Source: Blastocladiella emersonii ATCC 22665 (Eukaryota > Fungi > Blastocladiomycota). Taken from it: a stretch of DNA of 64,000 nucleotides. The position numbers and the translations under genes are program-made. A model generated the notes under the pieces. It saw nothing but the letters and a program-made list of their open reading frames with translations. It was not told the origin of the DNA and made no database searches. Each line of letters starts with the position of its first letter. Position 1 is the stretch's first letter. Where the stretch lies: contig JANHCV010000001.1 in the NCBI GenBank assembly GCA_025594325.1, positions 2,728,001 to 2,792,000 of the forward strand. The letters are read 5' to 3'. Below are positions 3,958-13,329 of the stretch, one piece after another.

Positions 3958-5633
3958 TCAGCCGATCTCGTGGACGATCTCGTGCACGACAAAGTCGTCG
4001 TACAGCAGCGTGACGCCGTCGCGCGCGTAGTGGAAGGCCGTGTAGCACTCGGCGCACCACCGGCACGGGTTGGCCACGGCGTGGCGGTCGCCGCGCGTCA
4101 CGTACCGCGCGGCGCGGTAGTCGCAGACCGTGCACCGCTGCCGCCGCGTGTGCCGCTTGAAGGTGGTCCGCGGGTACGATGTCTCGGGCGGGTCGGCGAC
4201 TGGATTCCACAAGCTAGGTTTGGGGGATGTTAGGGGACGGTGAGGTGCGAGTGTGGGGTGGTGGTGGACGCGTACCGAATGTTCTGGACAATGACGAGGT
4301 GCTCGCACGCGCCCTGGTGGACGAGCACGTACGGCTCGTTGATGCGCAGCGGGACCGCGTCGAGCGGCGTCGACTCCATGGGCAGCCGCTCGAGCGGGAG
4401 GTTGCGCGCCGTGTACCACTGCATGATTGGGCTACATTCCGACGTCGTCAGTGACACGGATCAGCCAGACCCGTCCAAGAAAAAAGCGTACCCAGCGACG
4501 TCGAGCAATCGGTACCCCGCGCGCCCGTCGACGAGGATGCGGCCGTCGACGACGAGCGCGCTCGGCGACGTCTTGGGCTTGCCGGCCTCGGGGTTGTTGG
4601 CGCCGGCCTGGCGCTCGTGCGGCGACGTGTAGTCGGCAGGGCAGAAGAGGTGGTCGCGGAGAACGGAGAAGGGCTGGGTCGAGAGGACCTCGATCTCGCG
4701 CAGGCGGCGCTGCGGGTGCACGGGGTCGTGCAGCGAGATAGTCACGACGGACAGGTCCCGGTACGCGGGGAACGGCGGCAGGTGCGCGGTCAGGATGGTC
4801 TTGGGGACGCCGTTGACGTTGAAGCCTTGCGGCGCCATGCTGGTCGCGGGCTACGAGCGAGAGTGCGGTCGTGAGTGGACGTGCCGACCGCTGAGAAGTA
4901 ACCAAGTAGTACCAGTCGCTCGTGCGTCCCGCGCTCACCCGACTCCTCGGGCGGCGTGGCGGCATTGATCTCGGGCATCAGCGGCATCGGGGCGAGCTCG
5001 AACGTGTCGTCCTGGGCCGACCGCAGCCCACTTGCCTCGCGCATGACCGTGATCGTGTCGAGCTGCTGCTGCAGCGTCGACGGCGCCTCGGACAGCACGA
5101 GCGCGGCCGGGAGCGGCTTGCGCACCGGAAAGTCGGCCGACCGGCGCTGCGCCGACTCGGCACGCTGCTGCTGCAGGTGGTGGAACAGTGCGCTCTCGCG
5201 CAGATACCACCCGGGGTCGCGGTCGTGCCGCCCCGGCCAGTCCTCGGCGGCCGGGTCCGCGAGCGGATCGCCGGCGGCGGGCGGCGGAATGAAGGGCCAC
5301 CGCCGTTCCTCGGGCAGTTTCCACATGGGCGCGTCGGGGTTGGCGGACGCGATCACGGCGCTACGGTTGGTTCGGCGAGTCAGGCGTGTCATGCCCACTG
5401 GAACGTCCAGAGAGAGCACGTACTTACTCGATGGCGGGCTCTAGCTCGGGCCGCTCGTACGCCCACCACACGTTGGCGAGGATGCCCTGCAGCTCGTGCG
5501 ACGCGCGCGCGGCGTGGGCGCGGGCGTAGGCGTGGAACTCGGGCAGCGACACGGGCGGGCTCGCAGCCACGTCGCGGAACAGCACGCGGCTCGGCCGCCA
5601 TGCGCGCGGGCGGGTCGGGTCGGACTGATTCAT
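3958..5633 (-). CDS. SNAPC3: snRNA-activating protein complex subunit 3 (SNAP50), about 5 exons
   Basis: Spliced minus-strand exons give [13 protein letters not shown] and C-terminal CTVC..A.YVT..D.....PC.WC..CY..FHY..DG, the SNAP50 C-terminal zinc finger. ATG at 5633. Exon boundaries approximate. Confidence 0.85.
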
Positions 5634-6013
5634 GGTTGCATGTGGGGGCGGGGTCTGGGGTGAGAGAGCGACGGAGGGACGACGAGCAGCAGAGAGAGGA
5701 GCGGCTCGACGACTCACGTGGGCGAGCCGGGCGCGTCGTGCTCAGCAGCGCACGCGAGGCGAACGCCACACCGCCGCCGCTGGCCGGCCCTCCATCCGGG
5801 ACTCGCCCTCCCCTCCCCTCCCTCCCGACCCGCTAGTGCCACGCGCGCATCCCACGAGACTACCTGCACTGCATCTCTCCCACGTAACGCTACGCAACGA
5901 CACCCGGCACCGCACGCCCCGCCGACCCCCCGACCCGTGCTCGCCCGCCCCATCTCGATCGCCCCTCGAGACCTGCCACACCCAAACACGCACCAATCTC
6001 TCGCCAGGCAACC

Positions 6014-6809
6014 ATGTCTGCACCCGCCGCCCCCAACGCCGCGCCGGTCCAGGTCAAGCTGGTCCTTCTCGGTGCGTGCGCCGCCTCCCGATGAGCGAGC
6101 GAACGGTTTCCGGGGGAGCGATCCGTTTGCTGACGTGTGTGCGCCACCACGCCTCGTTGTGCGTAGGCCAGGCCGCCGTCGGCAAGTCGTCGCTCGTGCT
6201 GCGCTTCGTGCGCAACGAGTTCCAGGAGAACCGCGAGCCGACGATTGGCGCCGCCTTCCTGACGCAGAAGTGCAAGGTGGACGACAAGGTGGTCAAGTTC
6301 GAGATCTGGGACACGGCCGGCCAGGAGCGCTTCCACTCGCTCGCCCCCATGTACTACCGCAACGCGCTCGCCGCCATCGTCGTCTACGACGTGACCTCGG
6401 CCCAGTCCTTTGACAAGGCCAAGTCGTGGGTCAAGGAGCTGCAGCTGCAGGGCAACTCCAACATCGTCATTGCCCTCGCCGGCAACAAGATTGACCTTAT
6501 CAAGTCCGAGGGTGAGGGAGTCCGCGAGGTCAGCGACCAGGAGGCCCGCGCCTACGCCGCCGAGACGGGCCTGCTCTTTTTCGAGACCTCGGCCAAGGAC
6601 GGAACCGGCGTCGAGGTCATCTTCAACGACATTGGTACGCTTGCTCGCTGTTTCGCTTCTGTGTGCAACCCACGCTCACCTCATCGCCCGCTTTCACGCG
6701 TCTAGCCAAGAAGATCCCCTTCGAGCAGATCCTCGCCAAGGCGAACGCGCCGCGCCAGGGCGTCAACCTGCACGAGCCGCAGCCCGCTGCCCCCAGCAAG
6801 TGCTGCTAA
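6014..6809 (+). CDS. RAB5: Rab5/Ypt51-family small GTPase; exons about 6014-6071, 6167-6634, 6706-6809
   Basis: VKLVLLG|QAAVGKSS, effector loop [38 protein letters not shown]-terminal CC prenylation motif. Confidence 0.95.
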
Positions 6810-7415
6810 ACGCACCCCCGTATCGTGTCGCCCCCGCTCGATCGGGTCATTTTGCCTCCCCTCCCTCCCGTCCCCCGCATCATCTTCTCTCGTGTAATCA
6901 TTCGTCTGCTCCCCCCTTGCTTTCCCCCCCGTTGTTTGCTTTCTGTTGACAAGATCCCGCTTTGTACGCTTGTGGTCGATTGTTGTTGTCCAAAGGGCCG
7001 GGATCTGGGAGACGGCCCACGCCGCACGCACGCGTGCATGTCTCGCATCTCACATCGCGTCTCGCGCCTTGCTTGACCACCACGCGCGCCCACCGACGAC
7101 GCGCGCCGCCTTCTGGTCCGCCTCGCGCACATGAGCGACGCGCGCGTGCGCATGGAATCAATCCCGATTCCAGCTTGCTCCGTGCGCCAGCGCACCACGT
7201 ATCACTCGAACGAAGCAGCGCACTTGACGCACTGGCACCCGCCGCGGCCCACCTATCGCATCGGCCGCGCTGGGCGCTCCATTTTCTCCATCCGCGGGCC
7301 CATGAACGCTGGCCGTGCCTGCCGCCGCGCCTGATGCATCCCACGCGACGCAAGTCGCGGCTGCGCCACCTCCCCGACACGACCACGCTGTGGCGCAACG
7401 CGTCATCCTGAAACC

Positions 7416-10400
7416 ATGGCCGCTACCGACGTTGCCGCCGCCGCACCGGCCGCACGGCGGCGATCTACTTCCCCGTATCCGCAACAACGACAACATCTGC
7501 CGTGCGATGGCCGGGCAAGGCCACGTCGATGCCGCGCCACGGCTGGGCCGTGGACTGCTCTCGCCGCGCTCGTCGTGACGCTGGTCCTGTGTGCTGGCTC
7601 GACCCATGCGCGAATCACCATCGCCTTCACCAATGCGCTGCGAGGAGAGCTCGACGGCGTCAACGTATGATGATGGCTCCGATCTGTCCCGAGTCGAAAC
7701 CTACGCTGACACGGAGATCCTGTGGCTAGGGCGTCGGCGGTGTCCCGCGGCTCAAGACGGTCCTGTCGCAGTACCCTTCCGCACTCCGCATCAACACCCA
7801 CGGCTTCATCGGGAGCGGCGCCATGTTTGCCAAGTCGGCGGGTACCGTGGAGACGGACGTGCTCAGCACCATCTTTCACGCTACGGGGTGCGCTAACCCG
7901 CGCTTGTTCCTCATCAACGCCGCGACTGACCTTCCCCGAATGTAGTTTCGGGACCCGCGAGCTCGGCCTCGGCGTTTCCAGGCTCGCATCGAGTACGCTC
8001 CAACTACACCGACATGATCGGAGCGAGCTCACCCGTCTCCGTCATGTCTAGACGTGGTTGCGCGAGCAGGAACCACAGCAGTCCTCGCGTCGACATGGTC
8101 GTTCGCCTCGCGCTCGTCGCTGTTCACGGGCGTCAAGCCGTACACGGTCCTCTCGGCCGTCGACAGCGTGACCAACGCGGCCGTCCGAATCGGCGTCGTG
8201 ACGCTCGGCAACCCTGGTACGCGGTCCGATCGCCGACTCGACAACGCGGCTGACTCCTTCGCCGTGTAGCAATCTGCACCGTCGCCAACTGCAACGACCT
8301 GACGGGCCCGGTCCTGCGGCCCTCGCTCAACGCCACGACGCGGCTCCGCGAGCTCGTCGCGCAGCTCACGGCCATGGAGAGCGTGCAGCTCGTCGTTGCC
8401 ATCGGGACGAGCGCGTCGCCGTCAGCGGCCGCGGCCGAGCTGGCTCTGGCCCACACAGTCCCCGGCATCGACGTGGTCCTGCTCGGCGCCACGGCGGCGG
8501 CGCTCCCGGGCGTCGCGAGCCCCGCCAACTTCCCGTGGATCACCACCAACGCTGCCGGCGGGCATCCTCTCCACGTCGCGCTCCTGCCCGGCGACTCGGG
8601 CGCCGCGGTCGGTATCGTCCATCTCGACGGGATCACGTCGGCGACCTCGCCTCTCACGTCCATCGTCACCGTTTCGGGGGCGCGGGTCGCGCTGTCGTGC
8701 CCCGACCCCGCGGCCACGACCTGCGTGCAGCCGGACTCGGCGACACAGACGGATATCACCAACCGCCTCGCCGCGCTTGTCTCGGCCTCGTCGTCGTTCT
8801 CGCTCTCCCTCGGCTCGGCGCTCCGCGCGAGCGCGTGCGCGAGCAACACCGAGTGCGCGCTCGGTGCGCTTGTCGCGCGCGCCGTCCGGTCCACGGGCTC
8901 GTGCTCCGCATCGCTCGTCACCGTGGCCCCGCTCGTTAACGTCACGACCCGCGACGCGGGCACCTCGCTGTCGTGGGACGACCTGCGCGCCGTGTACCCA
9001 GCCAACGACGCGGTCGGCGTGGCGATGGTCTCAACGCTCGACCTCGTCGACTGGGTGACGTGGGCGCGCGCGAGCGACGGGTTCGCGCAGGCGTCGGGGC
9101 TCGCCGTGACGCTCAACGCGGCCGGCGCCATCATCGACGTGGCCGTCGGCGGCACGTCCGTCGTCACGGGCGACCAGGCGCGGACCATCACCGTGTGCAC
9201 GACGGGCTCGATGCTGGCGCGGATGCCCGACGCCCTGCGCGCGCGGCTCGCGGCGGATGCGTGGAATATCAACGTGATCGACGCCATGTACCTCGCGTAC
9301 GTGGGCAGCCCGAGCGCGTTCACGTTCGCGCCCGAGGGCACGTGGACCGTGTCGTCGGCGTCGCAGGCCACGGCGGTCGTCACGGGCACCTGCACGTACA
9401 ATGCGTCGGCGACGCTGGCCGGGTCGCCGAAACCGGCCGCGTCGCAGCAAGAGCAGTGCACGGGGATCCGGCTCGGCGCCGACTTTACGCACGAGCTCTT
9501 CGCGCCGGGCGGCGGGGCGCAGCAGCTCGTGGCCATGGCGCTCAACCTCACGCTGCCCGACTTCACCGGCGGCGATGCCGCGTACATTGCGTCGTCGCCG
9601 TCGGCCCCGCCCGCCGTCACGCTCACGTCCAGCGGGATCGCTACCGCGCCGTTCGCGCCCGCGTACGTCCGCATCGTGTACACGGGCCGCCGGATCTCGT
9701 CGGCGCCCGTCACGATTGCGGCCACGGGCCTCACGGCGTGCCCCGACGGGTACATTCCGCTGGGCTCCAACGCCTGCGAGGCGTGTCCCGCGGGCAGCTA
9801 CCGGAACGGCACGCTGTCGTGGTGCGCGCCGTGCCCGGCCGGGACGGTGGCCAGCGCCACGGGCTCGACGTCGTGCACCCCGTGCAGCGCGGGCTCCGTC
9901 GCCGCGTCCGCGGGCCAGTCGACGTGCTCGGCGTGTCCCGCGGCCATGTACGCGCCGGCCATGGGTCTCTCAGCGTGCCTGGCGTGCACGGCGCCGCGGA
10001 TCCGCGCGTCGAACGCGCTGTGTGTGTGCCCGATCGACGGGCACGTCTTTGACCCGTCGACGGGCGCGTGCACGGCGCCGGGCGTCATGTCGTCGATCGC
10101 GATCACGTCGTCGTTCCTGGCGGGCGCCGCGGGCCTGCTCATCTTCGCGACGGTCGTGAGCGTGTACATGTGGAGCAAGAAGCGGCCGCGGAGCAGCAGC
10201 GGCGGGAGCGGGAGCAAGGGGTCGGGGCGCACGCCGCGGTCCGTGATCCAGTCGCAGCAGCAGGCGCAGCTCAGCAGCCAGATCCAGAACCAGCTGAGCT
10301 CGTCGGCGGCCGCGAGCCAGCTGTCGGGCGGCGGCGTCGACGCGCAGCTCGACGCGCCCATCAAGCGCGCCATCGATATCTTGCAGATGCTCAAGGCGTC

Positions 10401-13067
10401 AACGGTCAGCGCGCGGCTCAAGAAGCAGATCGACCACGTCGTCGCGATCCTCGTCGCCGGCGACATGTTCTCGCCGCAGCTCGACCAGCTCGAGGGCGAG
10501 GATATGGATGACGAGGTCAAGGAGTGGCTCGCGACCACGATCGTCGGGAAACGCACGTCGACGACGAGCGATACGCGCGCCGTGGTCGGGACCGCGACGC
10601 GGATGCACGCGACGGTTGGCCGCGTGGCCAACGCCGGCAGCATCCCGTTCGAGCAGCCGGCGTCGCTGGTCGCGGACGCGATCCCGGCCATCGAGTACCT
10701 CGCCAACGACGTGTTCCGGCTCGGCACGCTGCACACGACCCGGGTGCGCGAGATGCTCGAGGCGAGCCACCAGTGGGATTTTGACATTTTCGCGTTCACC
10801 GAGGCGACCAACGGGCACCCGCTGCTGTTCCTGTCGTACTACATGATCAAGAAGCTCAAGCTGCTCGAGGAGATCAAGGGCGTCGAGGAGATCATCCTGC
10901 TGCAGTACCTGGACGAGATCGAGCTCACGTACCAGGACAACCCGTACCACAACGCGATCCACGCCGCCGACATGACCCAGGCCATGTGGGTGTTCCTGCA
11001 CGACGAGCGGCTCGCCGGCGCGTGCTCGCCGCTCGAGCTGTTCGCCGTGATCCTCGCCTGCGCCATGCACGACGTCGACCACCCGGGCGTCACCAACGCC
11101 TTCATCGTCAAGTCGCGCCACCCGCTCGCCCTCCTGTACTCGGACACGTCCGTCCTCGAGTTCCACCACGCCGCTACGGGCATCTCGGTCGCCGAGCGGC
11201 GCGGCTTGTTCAAGAAGATGGGCCCGTCGTACGAGGACCTGCGCAAGATGATCATCGAGCTCGTCATGGCCACCGACATGGCCAAGCACTTTGAGTTCCT
11301 CAACAAGTTCAAGTCGCAGCTCGCCGCCGCGACCGCCGAGTCCCAGTCGAACGCTACAGGCGCATCGGCGGGAAGCGGCGCCCCAGCGTCTCCGTCGAGT
11401 GCCAACACGGCCGTCAACTCCCCAACGGGCGGCGGCGGCGGCTCGCCAGCCACGCCGACTGGGTCGAGCGCCGCGGGCTCGCCACCGAGCGAGGGCGTCA
11501 TGCTCAAGCTCGACAAGCCCGAAATCAAAGTGCTCGTGCTGATCATCGCCATGAAGTGCTCGGACCTCAACAACCCGACACGGCCGCGGCCAACGTCGCT
11601 CGAGTGGACCGGACGTATCATGGAGGAGTTTTACGTGCAGGGCGACCAGGAGCGCGCGCTCAACCTGCCCATCTCCAAGTTCATGGACCGCATGAGCCAG
11701 GCCGACGAGAACGTGGCCAAGTGTCAGGTACGGCGAGGTCGTGATTGACCGCGCTGATTCGTCCGCTCACGAACGCGAGCACGCGTGTGTAGACCTCATT
11801 CATCGACGTGATCGTCAGTCCGCTATACCAGGTGTGGACGTCGTACCTGCGCTCGTCCGTGACCAACAGCATCATGGCCAACGTGCACGCGAACCGGCAC
11901 TACTGGTCGCAGGGCGCTCGGTCGCGCGACAACCTGACCAACAGCCCGTCCATGGCCGCGGGCGGCGGCGGGTCCAAGTTCACGGTGAACGGGTCAACCA
12001 ACATTGTGGCCTCGGGGCTCGTGTCGGGCGCGTTCCCAGCGAGCGCGGCCGGGTCGCGGTCCAACTTCCACTTCCGCAAGGAGCGCTCGGCGAGCTTCAC
12101 GGGCAGCACGGGCACCACCGGTGCCGCGGTTCGCGGCGTGCGTCCGATCCCGCTGCCCGCGTCGAGTGCACCGGGGAGCGGCGCGGTCGGCGGGTCGCGG
12201 TCCGACAGCCACGGGTCCACGGCGTCGTCGCTCGGGTCCACGGGGACCAGCATCGCGTCGATCCGCACTAACAACACGGGTCACGCGTCGCTGCGGTTCC
12301 GGTCCACGAGCGAATACACGCACGGCGCCATCAACTACAATGCGTTCCACTACGGCTTCACCGCGGCGGACGCGGCGGGTGGCGGCGGCGGCAGCGGGCA
12401 AGGTGCCGATGGACAAACCGCAGGCGACGAGCCGGGCGTCCCGCTGGGCGCGGGCAACGGGCCGACTGTGTCGTCGATTCTCGCCAACATCACCGAGGAC
12501 AGCAATAGCAGCCTGGCCAAGACGCAGGGCAGCAGCGCGCTCGACTCGACGGCCACGGCGCTCGACGTGGTGAGCATGGAGGGCGGCGTTGGGAGCGTCA
12601 GCAGCAGCCACGCCGGGATCCCGACGTCGATGCCCGCGCTCGAGACGGCGGGCGGCGGCGGCGGCGGAGGCCTCCGCATCGCGGCGCCGTCCAACCGGCG
12701 CAGCAGCTTCAGCAGCACGGCGTCGGCCGAGTACGCGACGAGCCGGCGCGGGAGCATTGGCGGCGCGCCGCCGCCCATGACGCTCCCGGGCGCGACCGCC
12801 GCCGTGCCCTCGCCCGCGGCCCCCGTCCCTGTGCGCCGCGGGTCGGCGTCGCTCCAGGGCCTCCGCGCGCTGCCCAGAGCCATCTCGTCGCAGGGCGCGA
12901 TCGGGATGCCCAACGTGATCCTCGAGGAGGAGGACGGCGTGCACGAGGACCCATCACGGCCCGCGGCGCAGGGAAAGGAGGCGGTGCAACCGAGCGCAGC
13001 AGCAGAGGCGCCCGTCCCCATCCTCGTCGACGAGCCGCCAAGGATCACGCCGTCGTTGCAGCCGTAG
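7416..13067 (+). CDS. Single-pass transmembrane class I cyclic-nucleotide phosphodiesterase: degenerate 5'-nucleotidase-fold ectodomain + Cys-rich (GCC2/GCC3-like) repeats + TM + PDEase catalytic domain + Ser/Gly-rich tail
   Basis: Predicted introns about 7665-7729, 7888-7946, 7993-8050, 8217-8270 and 11728-11792. Hydrophobic signal-like segment WTALAALVVTLVLCAGSTHA. CxxCPAG repeats at about 9770-10080. TM segment LAGAAGLLIFATVVSVYMW. PDE motifs YHNAIHAAD, HDVDHPG, LEFHH, ATDMAKH, KCSDLNNP, EEFYVQGD, and CQ|TSFIDVIV across the last intron. Confidence 0.85.
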
Positions 13068-13329
13068 TGGGTGGCCTCGCTCAGTTTTGACGGCGCGCGC
13101 GCGTTGTGCCCTAATACATTTGCTCGCCTGATTCTTTCATCCGTCGCCGTGCTGGCCGCCGTGTGGGTCGGCCGAGGCATGCGAGGAGTAGTCGCGGTGT
13201 TCAGGTTTCAGCCGTCAAGCCTGCACCTGGCCTTCGATGGCGCCTCCTGCTCCCTCTCTCCCCCTCAACAACTACTCACCCTCCCATGAAAGCATAGCCG
13301 ATTGGCACCCTTGCAACTTAGCACACACC

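What the first reader, a model, noticed from the sequence alone, without database searches (positions are those of the whole stretch)
7416..13067. Receptor-phosphodiesterase: dead 5'-nucleotidase-fold ectodomain wired through one TM helix to an intact cNMP PDE
Seen in sequence: after splicing, the N-terminal part follows the UshA/CD73 5'-nucleotidase layout. The matching segments are ITIAFTNALRG, GGVPRL, FGTRELGLG, VKPYTV...RIGVVTLG, LAHTVPGIDVVLLG, ECALGALVARAVR, LSWDDLRAVYPAND and FAQASGL. The metal motifs are all replaced: TNDxH becomes TNALR, GNHE becomes GTRE, and GHSH becomes GATA. This is followed by CxxCPAG repeats, one TM helix, a short helical linker (APIKRAIDIL) and a class I PDE domain that keeps its His/Asp metal ligands and the invariant Gln. 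The tail carries RRxS PKA-type sites (RRSS, RRGS twice). Established knowledge: class I PDEs are normally soluble and regulated by intracellular domains such as GAF, PAS or UCR. Inference: this may be a cell-surface receptor in which ligand binding to a pseudo-enzyme directly tunes cAMP/cGMP breakdown, for example in zoospore chemosensing, mirroring receptor cyclases. I do not know of a described receptor with this architecture. The ligand need not be a nucleotide, because the substrate-binding residues also look altered.
Basis: partly seen in the sequence, partly recalled or inferred. Interest (0 to 1): 0.88.

Follow-up and report, generated by a model that had tools for sequence, protein, structure and literature searches.

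The report
Surface receptor-like cyclic-nucleotide phosphodiesterase
A water mould-like fungus (Blastocladiella emersonii) encodes a single-pass membrane protein whose outside part is a catalytically dead copy of a 5'-nucleotidase and whose inside part is an intact cAMP/cGMP-degrading enzyme, a layout that looks like a receptor that would lower second-messenger levels directly, and relatives with other outside domains exist in other zoospore-forming fungi.

Summary
Observation confirmed. Window 7416-13067 (+) is one six-exon gene of Blastocladiella emersonii ATCC 22665 encoding 1783 aa. In order it has an N-terminal signal/anchor helix, a two-domain 5'-nucleotidase (CD73-type) homologue, an unassigned ~140-aa region, Ephrin_rec_like Cys repeats, one TM helix, a 58-aa low-complexity spacer, a conserved ~70-aa linker module, an intact class I PDE domain and a low-complexity tail with a conserved RRGS motif. 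Every metal ligand, the catalytic His, and the conserved substrate Arg and stacking Phe of the nucleotidase are replaced.

One uninterrupted exon (8270-11727) runs from the nucleotidase-like domain into the PDE, so the fusion does not depend on splicing. The NCBI model truncates exon 1.

The same fusion occurs in B. britannica and on one metagenome contig. Allomyces has only the Cys repeats, and Sorochytrium has no ectodomain. Chytrids have ANF_receptor-TM-PDE proteins with the same linker and PDE clade.

Receptor function is inferred, not shown. There is no RNA or biochemical evidence, and the flexible spacer argues against rigid allosteric coupling. I found no paper describing this architecture. 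The scan also noted this stretch as s1-251627, and a second pseudo-nucleotidase gene elsewhere in the genome (s1-283565, untested).

The parts
7416..7664 (+). Exon 1. It encodes an Arg-rich N-terminus, a hydrophobic signal/anchor helix (residues 46-62, nt 7551-7601), a THA|R cleavage-like site and the first beta-strand ITIAFTNALRG (nt 7614-7646), which is the degenerate motif I.
   Evidence: The B. britannica orthologue has the same helix, the same HARVTLLFTNAVNG strand and an intron at the same codon. phmmer aligns this strand to VTILHTDDLHG of bacterial 5'-nucleotidases. The NCBI model P0001 uses only the first 15 nt.
7730..8216 (+). Exons 2-4 (7730-7887, 7946-7992, 8052-8216). They encode the rest of the N-terminal half of the metallophosphatase-like domain, including INTHGFIGSG (degenerate GD motif, 7790-7819) and GTRELG (degenerate GNHEFD, 7950-7967).
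   Evidence: The junctions are identical to the NCBI model. The intron positions are conserved in B. britannica.
8270..11727 (+). Exon 5, a single 3458-nt open exon. It runs from the nucleotidase-like N domain through the C domain, Cys repeats, TM helix, spacer and linker into most of the PDE catalytic domain.
   Evidence: ORF 8374..11748 has no stop. Independent DNA contigs cover it with no differences.
7611..8694 (+). Metallophosphatase-like N domain of the pseudo-5'-nucleotidase (residues 66-348, introns included). The motif IV His is Thr (AIGTSA, 8398-8415) and motif V GHxH is GATA (8479-8499).
   Evidence: 3jyf E 7e-4. Clade profile vs 2z1a/CD73 E 1e-17 to 1e-15. Column analysis. AlphaFold pLDDT about 85-95.
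8797..9321 (+). 5'-nucleotidase C-terminal-like domain (residues 383-557). The conserved substrate Arg and the stacking Phe are replaced.
   Evidence: Pfam 5_nucleotid_C E 9e-4, 19.7 bits, below the cut-off of 23.6..
9322..9738 (+). Unassigned ~140-aa region between the nucleotidase-like domains and the Cys repeats. It is conserved in B. britannica, the metagenome homologue and R. rosea P0086, and has two conserved Cys.
   Evidence: Alignments A1/A2. No Pfam hit. AlphaFold pLDDT below 60. The Atlas search gave only noise.
9739..10071 (+). Cys-rich stalk: Ephrin_rec_like (CxxCPAG) repeats, residues 697-807.
   Evidence: Pfam PF07699 E 4.6e-12, three stretches. Weak TNFR_ELAPOR1 and NCD3G hits.
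10087..10173 (+). Transmembrane helix (residues 813-841), followed by KKRPR.
   Evidence: Hydropathy 2.08 and positive-inside flank. Conserved in Allomyces, Sorochytrium, B. britannica and the metagenome homologue.
10174..10347 (+). Juxtamembrane low-complexity spacer (residues 842-899, 74% S/G/Q/A/T/P/N). Its sequence is not conserved among orthologues.
10348..10554 (+). Conserved linker module (LDAPIKRAIDIL ... DDEVKEWL, residues 900-968).
   Evidence: The motif is shared with Allomyces and Sorochytrium orthologues, chytrid ANF_receptor-TM-PDEs, kinase-GAF-PDEs and multi-pass PDEs.
10756..11900 (+). Class I PDE catalytic domain (residues ~1036-1395, intron 11728-11792 included).
- Metal and catalytic motifs: YHNAIHAAD (10945-10971), HDVDHPG (11068-11088), EFHH, ATDMAKH, CSDLNNP (11557-11577).
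- The invariant Gln lies in KCQTSFID (11719-11807).
- A species-specific low-complexity insert lies at 11326-11496.
   Evidence: Pfam PDEase_I E 5.4e-63. PDB PDE4/7/8 E 1e-51 to 1e-46, with the motifs aligned. The exon 5/6 junction is matched by the Allomyces and Sorochytrium proteins.
11901..13067 (+). Low-complexity C-terminal tail with RRSS (12696-12707), RRGS (12744-12755), the conserved motif RRGSASLQGLRALP (12834-12875) and the stop codon.
   Evidence: The motif is conserved in Allomyces (RRGSASLQGLRQLP) and Sorochytrium (RRGSIGLQGLKQLP).

Best explanation
The gene encodes a type I, receptor-like, membrane-anchored cyclic-nucleotide phosphodiesterase.

Shown:
- An N-terminal hydrophobic helix, and one internal TM helix followed by a basic cluster. 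By inference these place the first ~750 residues outside the cell or in a lumen and the PDE in the cytosol.
- The outside part is a homologue of CD73-type 5'-nucleotidases that has lost its whole dinuclear metal site, its catalytic His and its nucleotide-binding Arg and Phe. It is a pseudoenzyme sitting on a Cys-rich stalk.
- The inside part keeps every catalytic residue of class I PDEs and is closest to the cAMP-specific PDE4/7/8 enzymes.

Inferred:
- The bilobed, hinge-closing nucleotidase scaffold has been re-used as a binding module for an unknown extracellular ligand, probably not a nucleotide. This would be analogous to the ANF_receptor (periplasmic-binding-protein-like) domain that occupies the same position in the chytrid members of the same PDE clade.
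- The TM helix is joined to the PDE by a long flexible spacer. Ligand occupancy therefore most likely acts by changing dimerisation or clustering of the conserved linker module and catalytic domains, not by a rigid push-pull. The result would be a local change in cAMP (or cGMP) hydrolysis at the zoospore surface.
- A conserved RRGS motif in the tail suggests feedback by cAMP-dependent protein kinase.
For: Architecture:
- Gene model and single open exon.
- Assembly confirmed by independent contigs.
- PDE domain and catalytic motifs.

Nucleotidase homology:
- Single-sequence hits to both halves.
- Protein-language-model neighbours are nearly all 5'-nucleotidases.
- Clade profile vs PDB E 3.5e-17 and vs bacterial 5'-nucleotidase ORFs up to 127 bits.
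- AlphaFold model pLDDT 74 / pTM 0.71. Its 50 best Foldseek PDB matches are all 5'-nucleotidases, E about 1e-18.
- Loss of all conserved catalytic columns.

Topology.

Conservation:
- The whole architecture is conserved at 40% (ectodomain) and 63% (PDE) identity in B. britannica, with the same intron positions.
- It is also present on a metagenome contig at 35% and 58% identity.

Family context:
- The same linker motif and a 98/95-supported PDE clade are shared with ANF_receptor-TM-PDE and kinase-GAF-PDE proteins. Sensor modules are therefore exchanged in front of one linker+PDE unit.
- The same pseudo-nucleotidase+Cys-repeat module occurs without a PDE in Rhizophlyctis rosea.
- The RRGS motif is conserved in three genera.
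Against: - There is no transcript, protein, localisation or activity data. No RNA-seq run could be listed, and the public annotation is ab initio.
- The 58-aa low-complexity spacer and a second variable stretch before the catalytic domain make direct conformational coupling doubtful.
- Sorochytrium has the orthologous TM-linker-PDE with no ectodomain, and Allomyces has only the Cys repeats. The PDE therefore works without the pseudo-nucleotidase, and the ectodomain could be accessory.
- The N-terminal region before the hydrophobic helix is unusually long (45 aa) for a cleaved signal peptide. No dedicated signal-peptide or topology predictor was available.
- The AlphaFold model was built on an alignment dominated by true 5'-nucleotidases, so its fold is not independent of the sequence homology.
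- Substrate preference (cAMP vs cGMP) is not determined.
Confidence: 0.55

Rival explanations
1. Constitutive tethered PDE. The protein is a membrane-anchored PDE that shapes a local cAMP/cGMP pool, for example at the flagellar base or eyespot. The dead nucleotidase + Cys-rich ectodomain serves sorting, stability, adhesion or cell-wall/matrix contact and does not regulate catalysis.
For: - Orthologues lacking the nucleotidase-like domain (Allomyces) or any ectodomain (Sorochytrium) keep the TM, linker and PDE.
- The juxtamembrane spacer is flexible and non-conserved.
- The nucleotide-binding residues are lost.
- Membrane anchoring for compartmentation is established for other class I PDEs (own knowledge: PDE3, apicomplexan PDEs).
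Against: - The ectodomain is kept alignable at 35-40% identity with conserved cysteines across three organisms, while the tail has diverged beyond alignment.
- The equivalent position in the sister chytrid clade holds a classical ligand-binding domain, ANF_receptor.
- The same linker also follows GAF sensor domains.
Confidence: 0.3
2. Organelle-lumen orientation. The protein resides in an internal membrane (ER, Golgi, vacuole or zoospore-specific vesicles). The pseudo-nucleotidase faces the lumen and the PDE faces the cytosol, so it senses or is sorted by lumenal cues and not by extracellular ones.
For: The topology prediction says only lumenal/extracellular versus cytosolic. No localisation data exist.
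Against: Ephrin_rec_like/TNFR-type Cys repeats and CD73-type nucleotidases are typical of cell-surface proteins (family knowledge). Neighbouring genes noted by the scan are also single-pass surface proteins (s1-251627, untested).
Confidence: 0.1
3. Annotation or assembly artefact. The ectodomain and the PDE belong to separate transcripts or to a mis-joined assembly.
For: There is no RNA evidence. Public models of the orthologues are fragmented (B. britannica) or chimeric (Sorochytrium Rab5-PDE).
Against: - One 3.4-kb exon without stop codons spans both parts.
- Contigs from other runs of the same sample match with 0 differences.
- The same colinear arrangement is found in B. britannica and on a metagenome contig.
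Confidence: 0.04

Closest known systems
Ecto-5'-nucleotidase family (human CD73, Thermus thermophilus 5'-nucleotidase 2z1a, E. coli UshA, CpdB)
   Same: - The same two-domain layout: a metallophosphatase-like N domain, a long connecting helix and a 5_nucleotid_C domain.
- Extracellular location after a signal sequence.
- Profile E 3.5e-17 / 2e-15 to 2z1a / CD73. Foldseek E about 1e-18.
   Different: - All conserved metal ligands are replaced: NDxH, GD, GNH, the motif IV His and GHxH.
- The catalytic His, the substrate Arg of NGGxR and the stacking Phe of PFxN are replaced too.
- The Pfam gathering score is not reached.
- It is followed by an extra domain, a Cys-rich stalk, a TM helix and a PDE instead of a GPI anchor or a free C-terminus.
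Class I cyclic-nucleotide phosphodiesterases PDE4 / PDE7 / PDE8
   Same: The catalytic domain scores E 1e-51 to 1e-46, with identical His/Asp metal ligands and the invariant Gln.
   Different: - No UCR, PAS/REC or other known N-terminal regulator. Instead it has its own ~70-aa linker module.
- It is anchored by one TM helix behind a large ectodomain.
- There is a ~57-aa low-complexity insert inside the catalytic domain.
- The Tyr that in PDE4 fixes the Gln orientation appears replaced (alignment plus own knowledge of PDE4D numbering), so substrate preference is open.
Uncharacterised chytrid ANF_receptor-TM-PDE proteins (e.g. Spizellomyces punctatus SPPG_02406, P0041)
   Same: - The same PDE clade (98/95 support).
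- The same linker motif.
- The same order: signal peptide, ectodomain, one TM, linker, PDE.
   Different: The ectodomain is a periplasmic-binding-protein-type ANF_receptor domain, not a pseudo-nucleotidase with Cys repeats. These proteins are database entries only, and I found no paper on them.
Receptor (membrane) guanylyl cyclases such as NPR-A / GC-C
   Same: A single-pass catalytic receptor logic: an extracellular ligand-binding domain and an intracellular cyclic-nucleotide enzyme working as dimers (established knowledge).
   Different: It catalyses the opposite reaction, hydrolysis. It has no kinase-homology domain or coiled-coil signalling helix next to the membrane, and has a disordered spacer instead. 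Ligand control is not demonstrated.
Rhodopsin-phosphodiesterase (Rh-PDE) of choanoflagellates
   Same: A membrane sensor fused through a linker to a class I PDE, the one described receptor-PDE fusion (PMC7644710 / 10.1101/2020.04.14.040642, PMC8774190).
   Different: The sensor there is an 8-TM rhodopsin activated by light. Here there is a single TM helix and a large extracellular protein domain.
Class C GPCR ectodomain (Venus-flytrap module + Cys-rich NCD3G stalk)
   Same: A bilobed hinge domain placed on a Cys-rich stalk just outside the membrane. There is a weak NCD3G hit in the stalk (E 1.9e-4).
   Different: This is analogy only. The bilobed domain has a different fold, and the output is a single-pass PDE instead of a 7-TM bundle.

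Membership tests
Class I 3',5'-cyclic-nucleotide phosphodiesterase (Pfam PDEase_I) | Profile match above the curated threshold | tested here: met
   213.3 bits against a cut-off of 24.8, E 5.4e-63.
Class I 3',5'-cyclic-nucleotide phosphodiesterase (Pfam PDEase_I) | Metal-binding His/Asp residues (HNxxH, HD, D of TDM, D of CxDLxNP) and the invariant purine-clamping Gln | tested here: met
   YHNAIHAAD, HDVDHPG, EFHH, ATDMAKH and CSDLNNP are aligned residue for residue to a PDE4 structure. The Gln in KCQTSFID is matched by the orthologues.
Class I 3',5'-cyclic-nucleotide phosphodiesterase (Pfam PDEase_I) | Hydrolysis of cAMP and/or cGMP | not testable with these tools
   This needs an enzyme assay of the recombinant cytosolic part.
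5'-nucleotidase / UshA / CD73 family | Homologous two-domain fold (metallophosphatase domain + 5_nucleotid_C) | tested here: met
   Clade profile E 3.5e-17 over both domains. Single sequence 7e-4 and 9e-4 for the two halves. Foldseek top 50 matches are all 5'-nucleotidases.
5'-nucleotidase / UshA / CD73 family | Pfam gathering thresholds for Metallophos and 5_nucleotid_C | tested here: not met
   5_nucleotid_C scores 19.7 bits against 23.6. Metallophos gives no hit.
5'-nucleotidase / UshA / CD73 family | Dinuclear metal site and catalytic His (motifs NDxH, GD, GNHE, H, GHxH) | tested here: not met
   The motifs read NALR, HG, GTRE, T and GATA in B. emersonii. These columns are 87-100% conserved in 45 bacterial 5'-nucleotidases. 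Motif I was placed.
5'-nucleotidase / UshA / CD73 family | Nucleotide-binding Arg (NGGxR) and base-stacking Phe (PFxN) of the C domain | tested here: not met
   Arg is replaced by Asn and Phe by Ala (P0001 positions 352 and 373).
Ephrin_rec_like Cys-rich repeats (PF07699) | Profile match above threshold, repeated | tested here: met
   46 bits against 23.1, three stretches.
Single-pass catalytic receptor (receptor guanylyl-cyclase-like logic) | Signal sequence, extracellular domain, one TM, cytosolic enzyme | tested here: met
   Hydropathy peaks at 46-62 and 813-841, an Arg-rich N-flank and KKRPR after the TM. No dedicated predictor was available.
Single-pass catalytic receptor (receptor guanylyl-cyclase-like logic) | Ligand binding to the ectodomain changes enzyme activity | not testable with these tools
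   No ligand is known. The flexible 58-aa spacer is a point against rigid coupling.
Rhodopsin-phosphodiesterase | N-terminal microbial rhodopsin (8 TM, retinal Lys) | tested here: not met
   Only one internal TM helix and no rhodopsin domain.

The most novel reading that the evidence does not exclude
Zoospore-forming fungi possess a family of true receptor phosphodiesterases, the hydrolytic mirror image of receptor guanylyl cyclases. In this family one linker+PDE unit is driven by interchangeable extracellular binding modules: ANF_receptor in chytrids and a dead CD73-like clamshell on a Cys-rich stalk in Blastocladiella. An extracellular chemical cue would then lower cAMP/cGMP directly and steer zoospore swimming, encystment or germination. 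The pseudo-nucleotidase would be the first 5'-nucleotidase fold re-purposed as a receptor ligand-binding domain.
Probability: 0.3. Interest if true: 0.88.

Novelty: new variant of a known kind. Interest (0 to 1): 0.72.

Why it matters
Cyclic-nucleotide signalling has well-known receptor enzymes on the synthesis side (receptor guanylyl cyclases, rhodopsin cyclases). On the breakdown side only the light-driven rhodopsin-PDE is known. A single-pass PDE with a large extracellular protein domain would add a chemically addressable receptor-PDE class.

B. emersonii is already a model for cGMP-based phototaxis and a source of optogenetic tools. The modular linker+PDE unit, found behind ANF_receptor, GAF and pseudo-nucleotidase sensors, could guide the design of ligand-controlled PDEs.

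The finding also documents a clean case of a CD73-type enzyme turned into a pseudoenzyme. In addition, it corrects the public gene models of several Blastocladiomycota.

Tried and rejected
- RNA evidence: two run searches listed no RNA run, so the transcript could not be checked. Only DNA contigs were laid.
- First AlphaFold run with 5 sequences failed (pLDDT 32) and was discarded.
- Profile word-search with alignment A1 returned nothing, not even the query itself. The search was wasted.
- A metagenome scan with an alignment that included the Cys repeats returned only Cys-repeat proteins. An earlier attempt had no conserved stretch to search with.
- The exhaustive single-sequence search of 1.8 billion proteins found only 3 relatives of the ectodomain and no canonical nucleotidase. 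Homology had to be bridged through a clade profile.
- The isolated N-terminal piece of B. britannica gave no significant PDB hit. A clade profile against E. coli UshA aligned only parts. A pairwise alignment of B. emersonii to UshA was not above shuffles (43.5 against 37.6±7), although it starts at the expected strand.
- The region at residues 558-696 remains unassigned.
- The 1975 PNAS paper on Blastocladiella cyclic-nucleotide metabolism could not be opened.
- I rejected the NCBI 15-nt exon 1, because it removes the signal helix and first strand that B. britannica and all canonical nucleotidases have.
- I rejected the idea that the ectodomain still binds nucleotides in the CD73 manner.

Full report
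**Gene model.** Reading 7380-8460 and 11640-11900 and joining exons by script gives six exons: 7416-7664, 7730-7887, 7946-7992, 8052-8216, 8270-11727 and 11793-13067. Every intron is GT..AG. The CDS is 5352 nt with a single terminal stop and encodes 1783 aa. Exon 5 alone is a 3.4-kb open stretch (ORF 8374..11748). It begins inside the nucleotidase-like domain and ends inside the PDE catalytic domain, so the fusion of the two parts does not rest on any splice prediction. Logan contigs from other runs of the same sample cover 7300-13200 with no differences. One contig spans the whole stretch, and separate contigs run 7300-9842 and 9818-11438. The assembly is therefore sound.

**Organism and public annotation.** The protein search returned a 100%-identical entry, P0001, '3',5'-cyclic-nucleotide phosphodiesterase [Blastocladiella emersonii ATCC 22665]', 1705 aa. 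It uses the same exons 2-6 but only the first 15 nt of exon 1. It therefore lacks the hydrophobic N-terminal helix and the first strand. The genome paper says the annotation was made with funannotate and ab initio predictors, and it does not mention RNA-seq or PDEs (PMC9730499).

The long exon 1 is supported by three observations:
- The B. britannica homologue (P0087, KAI9221107.1, locus L003) carries the same helix. It has the same '...THA|RVTLLFTNAVNGRLVDTN|GVGGFARIK' sequence, with an intron at exactly the codon where my exon 1 ends. Introns 2-4 are also at the same positions.
- phmmer of the B. emersonii ectodomain against bacterial 5'-nucleotidase ORFs aligns ITIAFTNALRGELD..GVNGVGGVPRLKTVL with VTILHTDDLHGHVD..GANMYGGYTRQATLV. 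The alignment runs straight across the exon 1/2 junction.
- Local alignments to E. coli UshA start at the same strand.

**PDE domain.** Pfam PDEase_I scores 213 bits (E 5.4e-63). The best solved relatives are PDE4, PDE8 and PDE7 (E 1e-51 to 1e-46). In the printed alignment YHNAIHAAD, HDVDHPG, EFHH, ATDMAKH and CSDLNNP match the metal-binding and catalytic positions of a PDE4. The invariant Gln sits in KCQTSFIDVIV across the last intron, and the Allomyces and Sorochytrium proteins read the same through this point. A ~57-aa Ser/Gly/Ala/Pro insert (residues 1226-1282) is absent from Allomyces. Substrate preference cannot be decided. The nearest structures are cAMP-specific. By my reading of the alignment and PDE4D numbering from memory, the Tyr that locks the Gln in PDE4 is not conserved.

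**Ectodomain homology.**
- The single sequence gives only weak hits. These are CpdB 3jyf at E 7e-4 over the N domain, with GTRE under GNHE and LLGATAA under MFGHAHA, and Pfam 5_nucleotid_C at E 9e-4, 19.7 bits, below the 23.6 cut-off.
- The language-model neighbour search put 5'-nucleotidase clusters in at least 78 of the 100 nearest.
- The exhaustive HMMER search of 1.84 billion representatives found just three relatives. They are a JGI metagenome protein (P0085, 1.4e-36), Rhizophlyctis rosea KAJ3052925 (P0086, 8.5e-14, itself carrying a recorded 5_nucleotid_C hit) and the B. britannica fragment (P0087).
- A profile of these five rows (A1) hits solved 5'-nucleotidases over both domains. Thermus 2z1a scores E 3.5e-17 and human CD73 4h2f scores 2.2e-15.
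- I fetched 120 bacterial loci with a GNHEFD-type DNA pattern. The clade profile scored their ORFs at up to 127 bits.

Homology to the CD73-type family is therefore established, although the Pfam membership thresholds are not met by the single sequence.

**Dead active site.** I aligned 45 bacterial 5'-nucleotidases with the clade (A3) and examined the columns that are 80-100% conserved in bacteria.

| Conserved feature | B. emersonii | B. britannica |
|---|---|---|
| N-D-x-H | N-A-L-R | N-A-x-N |
| G-D | H-G | H-G |
| G-N-H-E-F-D | G-T-R-E-L-G | G-T-R-E-L-G |
| motif IV His | Thr | Thr |
| G-H-x-H | G-A-x-A | G-S-x-G |
| Arg of NGGxR | Asn | gap in the alignment |
| Phe of PFxN | Ala | Gly |

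No metal ligand survives. R. rosea P0086 keeps the motif II Asp, the motif III His, PFxN and GGDDY but has lost the other metal ligands.

**Structure.**
- AlphaFold with 5 sequences failed (pLDDT 32).
- With A3 (50 rows) it gave pLDDT 74.3 and pTM 0.71. Residues 5-479 of P0001 are mostly at 80-95, and the following region is below 60.
- Foldseek against the PDB returned only 5'-nucleotidases among the best 50 matches. These include 2z1a (1.1e-18), many CD73 entries, UshA and NadN. TM-scores are 0.5-0.6, as expected for a two-domain protein with a mobile hinge.
- The alignment was dominated by real nucleotidases, so this confirms compatibility with the fold and is not independent evidence.
- Residues 558-696 stay unassigned. 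They are conserved in the clade with two invariant Cys.

**Topology.** There are hydropathy peaks at residues 46-62 and 813-841. The N-flank is Arg-rich. A small-residue THA|R site is conserved in B. britannica. The outer flank of the TM has no charge and KKRPR lies on its inner flank. The ectodomain has an even number of Cys, eight of them conserved in the clade outside the repeats, plus five N-x-S/T sequons. Whether the first helix is cleaved or stays as an anchor, the ectodomain is outside or lumenal and the PDE is cytosolic. This is inference from sequence rules, because no dedicated predictor was available.

**Relatives and history.**
- tblastn of the 1783-aa model shows full colinearity in B. 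britannica (L003). Residues 31-844 and 901-1540 match at 40% identity in the ectodomain and 63% in the PDE. There are extra short GT..AG introns after WSKR and inside the PDE.
- The metagenome contig L002 is also colinear. Residues 294-843 match at 35% and residues 894-1410 at 58%. The contig starts inside the ectodomain.
- Three Allomyces species have orthologues with 60% identity in the PDE. These begin at the Cys repeats, and a SNAPC3 gene lies only ~700 bp upstream, which leaves no room for a nucleotidase-like domain.
- In Sorochytrium the public model is a Rab5-PDE chimera. Between the Rab5 part and the linker there is only a TM helix.
- Synteny supports orthology. SNAPC3 on the minus strand (window about 3973-4754) and a Rab5-type gene (window ORF 5632..6705, nearly identical to the N-terminus of P0034) precede the PDE gene in B. 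emersonii and Sorochytrium. SNAPC3 precedes it in Allomyces.
- The pseudo-nucleotidase + unknown domain + Cys repeats also exist in R. rosea without any PDE on the locus. There they are followed by ORFs with hydrophobic stretches.
- The ectodomain is therefore an older module that was joined to a pre-existing TM-linker-PDE gene in the Blastocladiella lineage, or was lost from it in Allomyces.

**A wider receptor-like PDE clade.**
- The PDE-region search returned chytrid proteins with ANF_receptor + PDEase_I. They come from Spizellomyces, Geranomyces, Borealophlyctis, Rhizophlyctis, Dinochytrium, Phlyctochytrium and Blyttiomyces.
- Pfam confirms the domain order. SPPG_02406 has a signal peptide, an ANF_receptor domain at 101-342, a TM near 490-515 and the PDE at 802-1029.
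- A two-part linker motif ([AGS]P.x[KR]A[IM][DE][IL]L ... D.[ED][VT][KR].W) precedes the PDE in several groups. These are the Blastocladiomycota single-pass proteins, the ANF_receptor proteins, large kinase-GAF-PDE proteins and the multi-pass PDEs of Catenaria and B. emersonii.
- A maximum-likelihood tree of the catalytic region puts three of these groups in one clade with 98/95 support. They are the Blastocladiomycota single-pass group (100/100), the kinase-GAF group (100/99) and the ANF_receptor group (100/100). The multi-pass group is their neighbour, and animal PDE4/PDE7 lie outside. The root is for drawing only.
- One linker+PDE unit thus sits behind several different sensor modules. This is the main argument that the pseudo-nucleotidase acts as an input domain.

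**Mechanism.**
- Shown: the architecture, the dead nucleotidase and the intact PDE.
- Inferred: 5'-nucleotidases are hinge-closing clamshells, and CD73 is a dimer (established knowledge). The ANF_receptor domain at the same position in chytrids is also a dimeric clamshell. A Cys-rich stalk below a clamshell recalls class C GPCRs.
- Against tight coupling: 58 residues of 74% S/G/Q/A/T/P/N follow the TM. They differ completely among orthologues.
- I therefore favour ligand-dependent dimerisation or clustering that brings the linker modules and catalytic domains together or apart, with PKA feedback through the tail.
- The tail motif RRGSASLQGLRALP (1707-1720) is conserved in Allomyces and Sorochytrium.
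- The main rival is a constitutively active, tethered PDE whose ectodomain serves localisation.

**Literature.** Searches on Blastocladiella + phosphodiesterase, single-pass PDEs, chytrid PDE/ANF_receptor and receptor-type PDE found nothing describing such a protein. The known receptor-PDE fusion is the choanoflagellate rhodopsin-PDE (PMC8774190, 10.1101/2020.04.14.040642). Avelar et al. recall that cAMP and cGMP PDE activities were described in B. emersonii in the 1970s and that a putative cGMP PDE cDNA exists (PMC4046227). Which gene that is remains unknown to me.

**Earlier scan notes.** The scan's own notes list this stretch again (s1-251627). They also list a second pseudo-5'-nucleotidase on a Cys-rich stalk with a multi-pass membrane part 1.15 Mb away (s1-283565, s1-283908). 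I could not reach that locus. It resembles what I saw in R. rosea.

**Verdict.** The ectodomain is a genuine 5'-nucleotidase-derived pseudoenzyme and the PDE is intact and cytosolic. The receptor interpretation is reasonable and gains support from the chytrid ANF_receptor-PDE relatives. It remains untested and is weakened by the flexible spacer and by orthologues without the ectodomain.

Noticed in passing
window 7416-7729: The NCBI model of this gene (P0001) joins the first 15 nt directly to exon 2. This deletes the signal/anchor helix and the first beta-strand, so the public protein is 78 aa too short at the N-terminus.
   Followed up: yes
L003:8052-14030 (B. britannica MU624754.1): The orthologue is annotated as two unrelated fragments, a 202-aa 'hypothetical protein' and a 312-aa PDE, with ~2.9 kb left unannotated between them. 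tblastn shows one colinear gene with at least eight exons.
   Followed up: partly
L206:8001-12543 (Sorochytrium milnesiophthora): The public model P0034 is a chimera of the upstream Rab5-type GTPase gene and the TM-linker-PDE gene. The same Rab5-type gene lies upstream of the PDE gene in the window (ORF 5632..6705).
   Followed up: partly
window 3973-4754 (-) and 5632-6705 (+): A SNAPC3 homologue on the minus strand and a Rab5-type GTPase on the plus strand precede the PDE gene. This order is conserved in Sorochytrium, and SNAPC3 is conserved in Allomyces.
   Followed up: yes
P0037, P0040-P0043, P0045, P0046, P0048 (chytrid proteins): Chytridiomycota encode signal peptide-ANF_receptor-TM-linker-PDE proteins. 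They appear uncharacterised and form a 100/100 clade next to the Blastocladiomycota single-pass PDEs.
   Followed up: partly
P0035, P0038, P0039, P0044, P0047: Very large (2100-2560 aa) chytrid proteins combine a protein kinase domain, GAF domains and a PDE of the same clade. They carry the same linker motif in front of the PDE.
   Followed up: no
L004:2540-6700 (Rhizophlyctis rosea JADGJD010000253.1): P0086 is a partly degenerate 5'-nucleotidase homologue (GTHDF, PFxN kept) with the same extra domain and Cys repeats but no PDE. Downstream ORFs contain hydrophobic stretches that look like a multi-pass membrane part, and the annotated C-terminus is probably wrong.
   Followed up: partly
window 11326-11496: A ~57-aa Ser/Gly/Ala/Pro-rich insert lies inside the PDE catalytic domain. 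It is absent from the Allomyces and Sorochytrium orthologues.
   Followed up: no
P0052 (B. emersonii, same 5.14-Mb contig) and P0051 (Catenaria): A paralogous PDE has several N-terminal TM helices and the same linker motif. B. emersonii therefore has at least two membrane-anchored PDEs of this lineage.
   Followed up: no
L001:9602-10090 (Allomyces macrogynus): The Allomyces orthologue as annotated starts directly at the Cys repeats. No signal peptide is present, and none is visible in frame upstream. Its true N-terminus is unresolved.
   Followed up: partly
window 9610: One low-depth contig of run X3 lacks one base here. The deep contigs of X1 and X2 agree with the window, so this is probably an assembly error in that run.
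   Followed up: no
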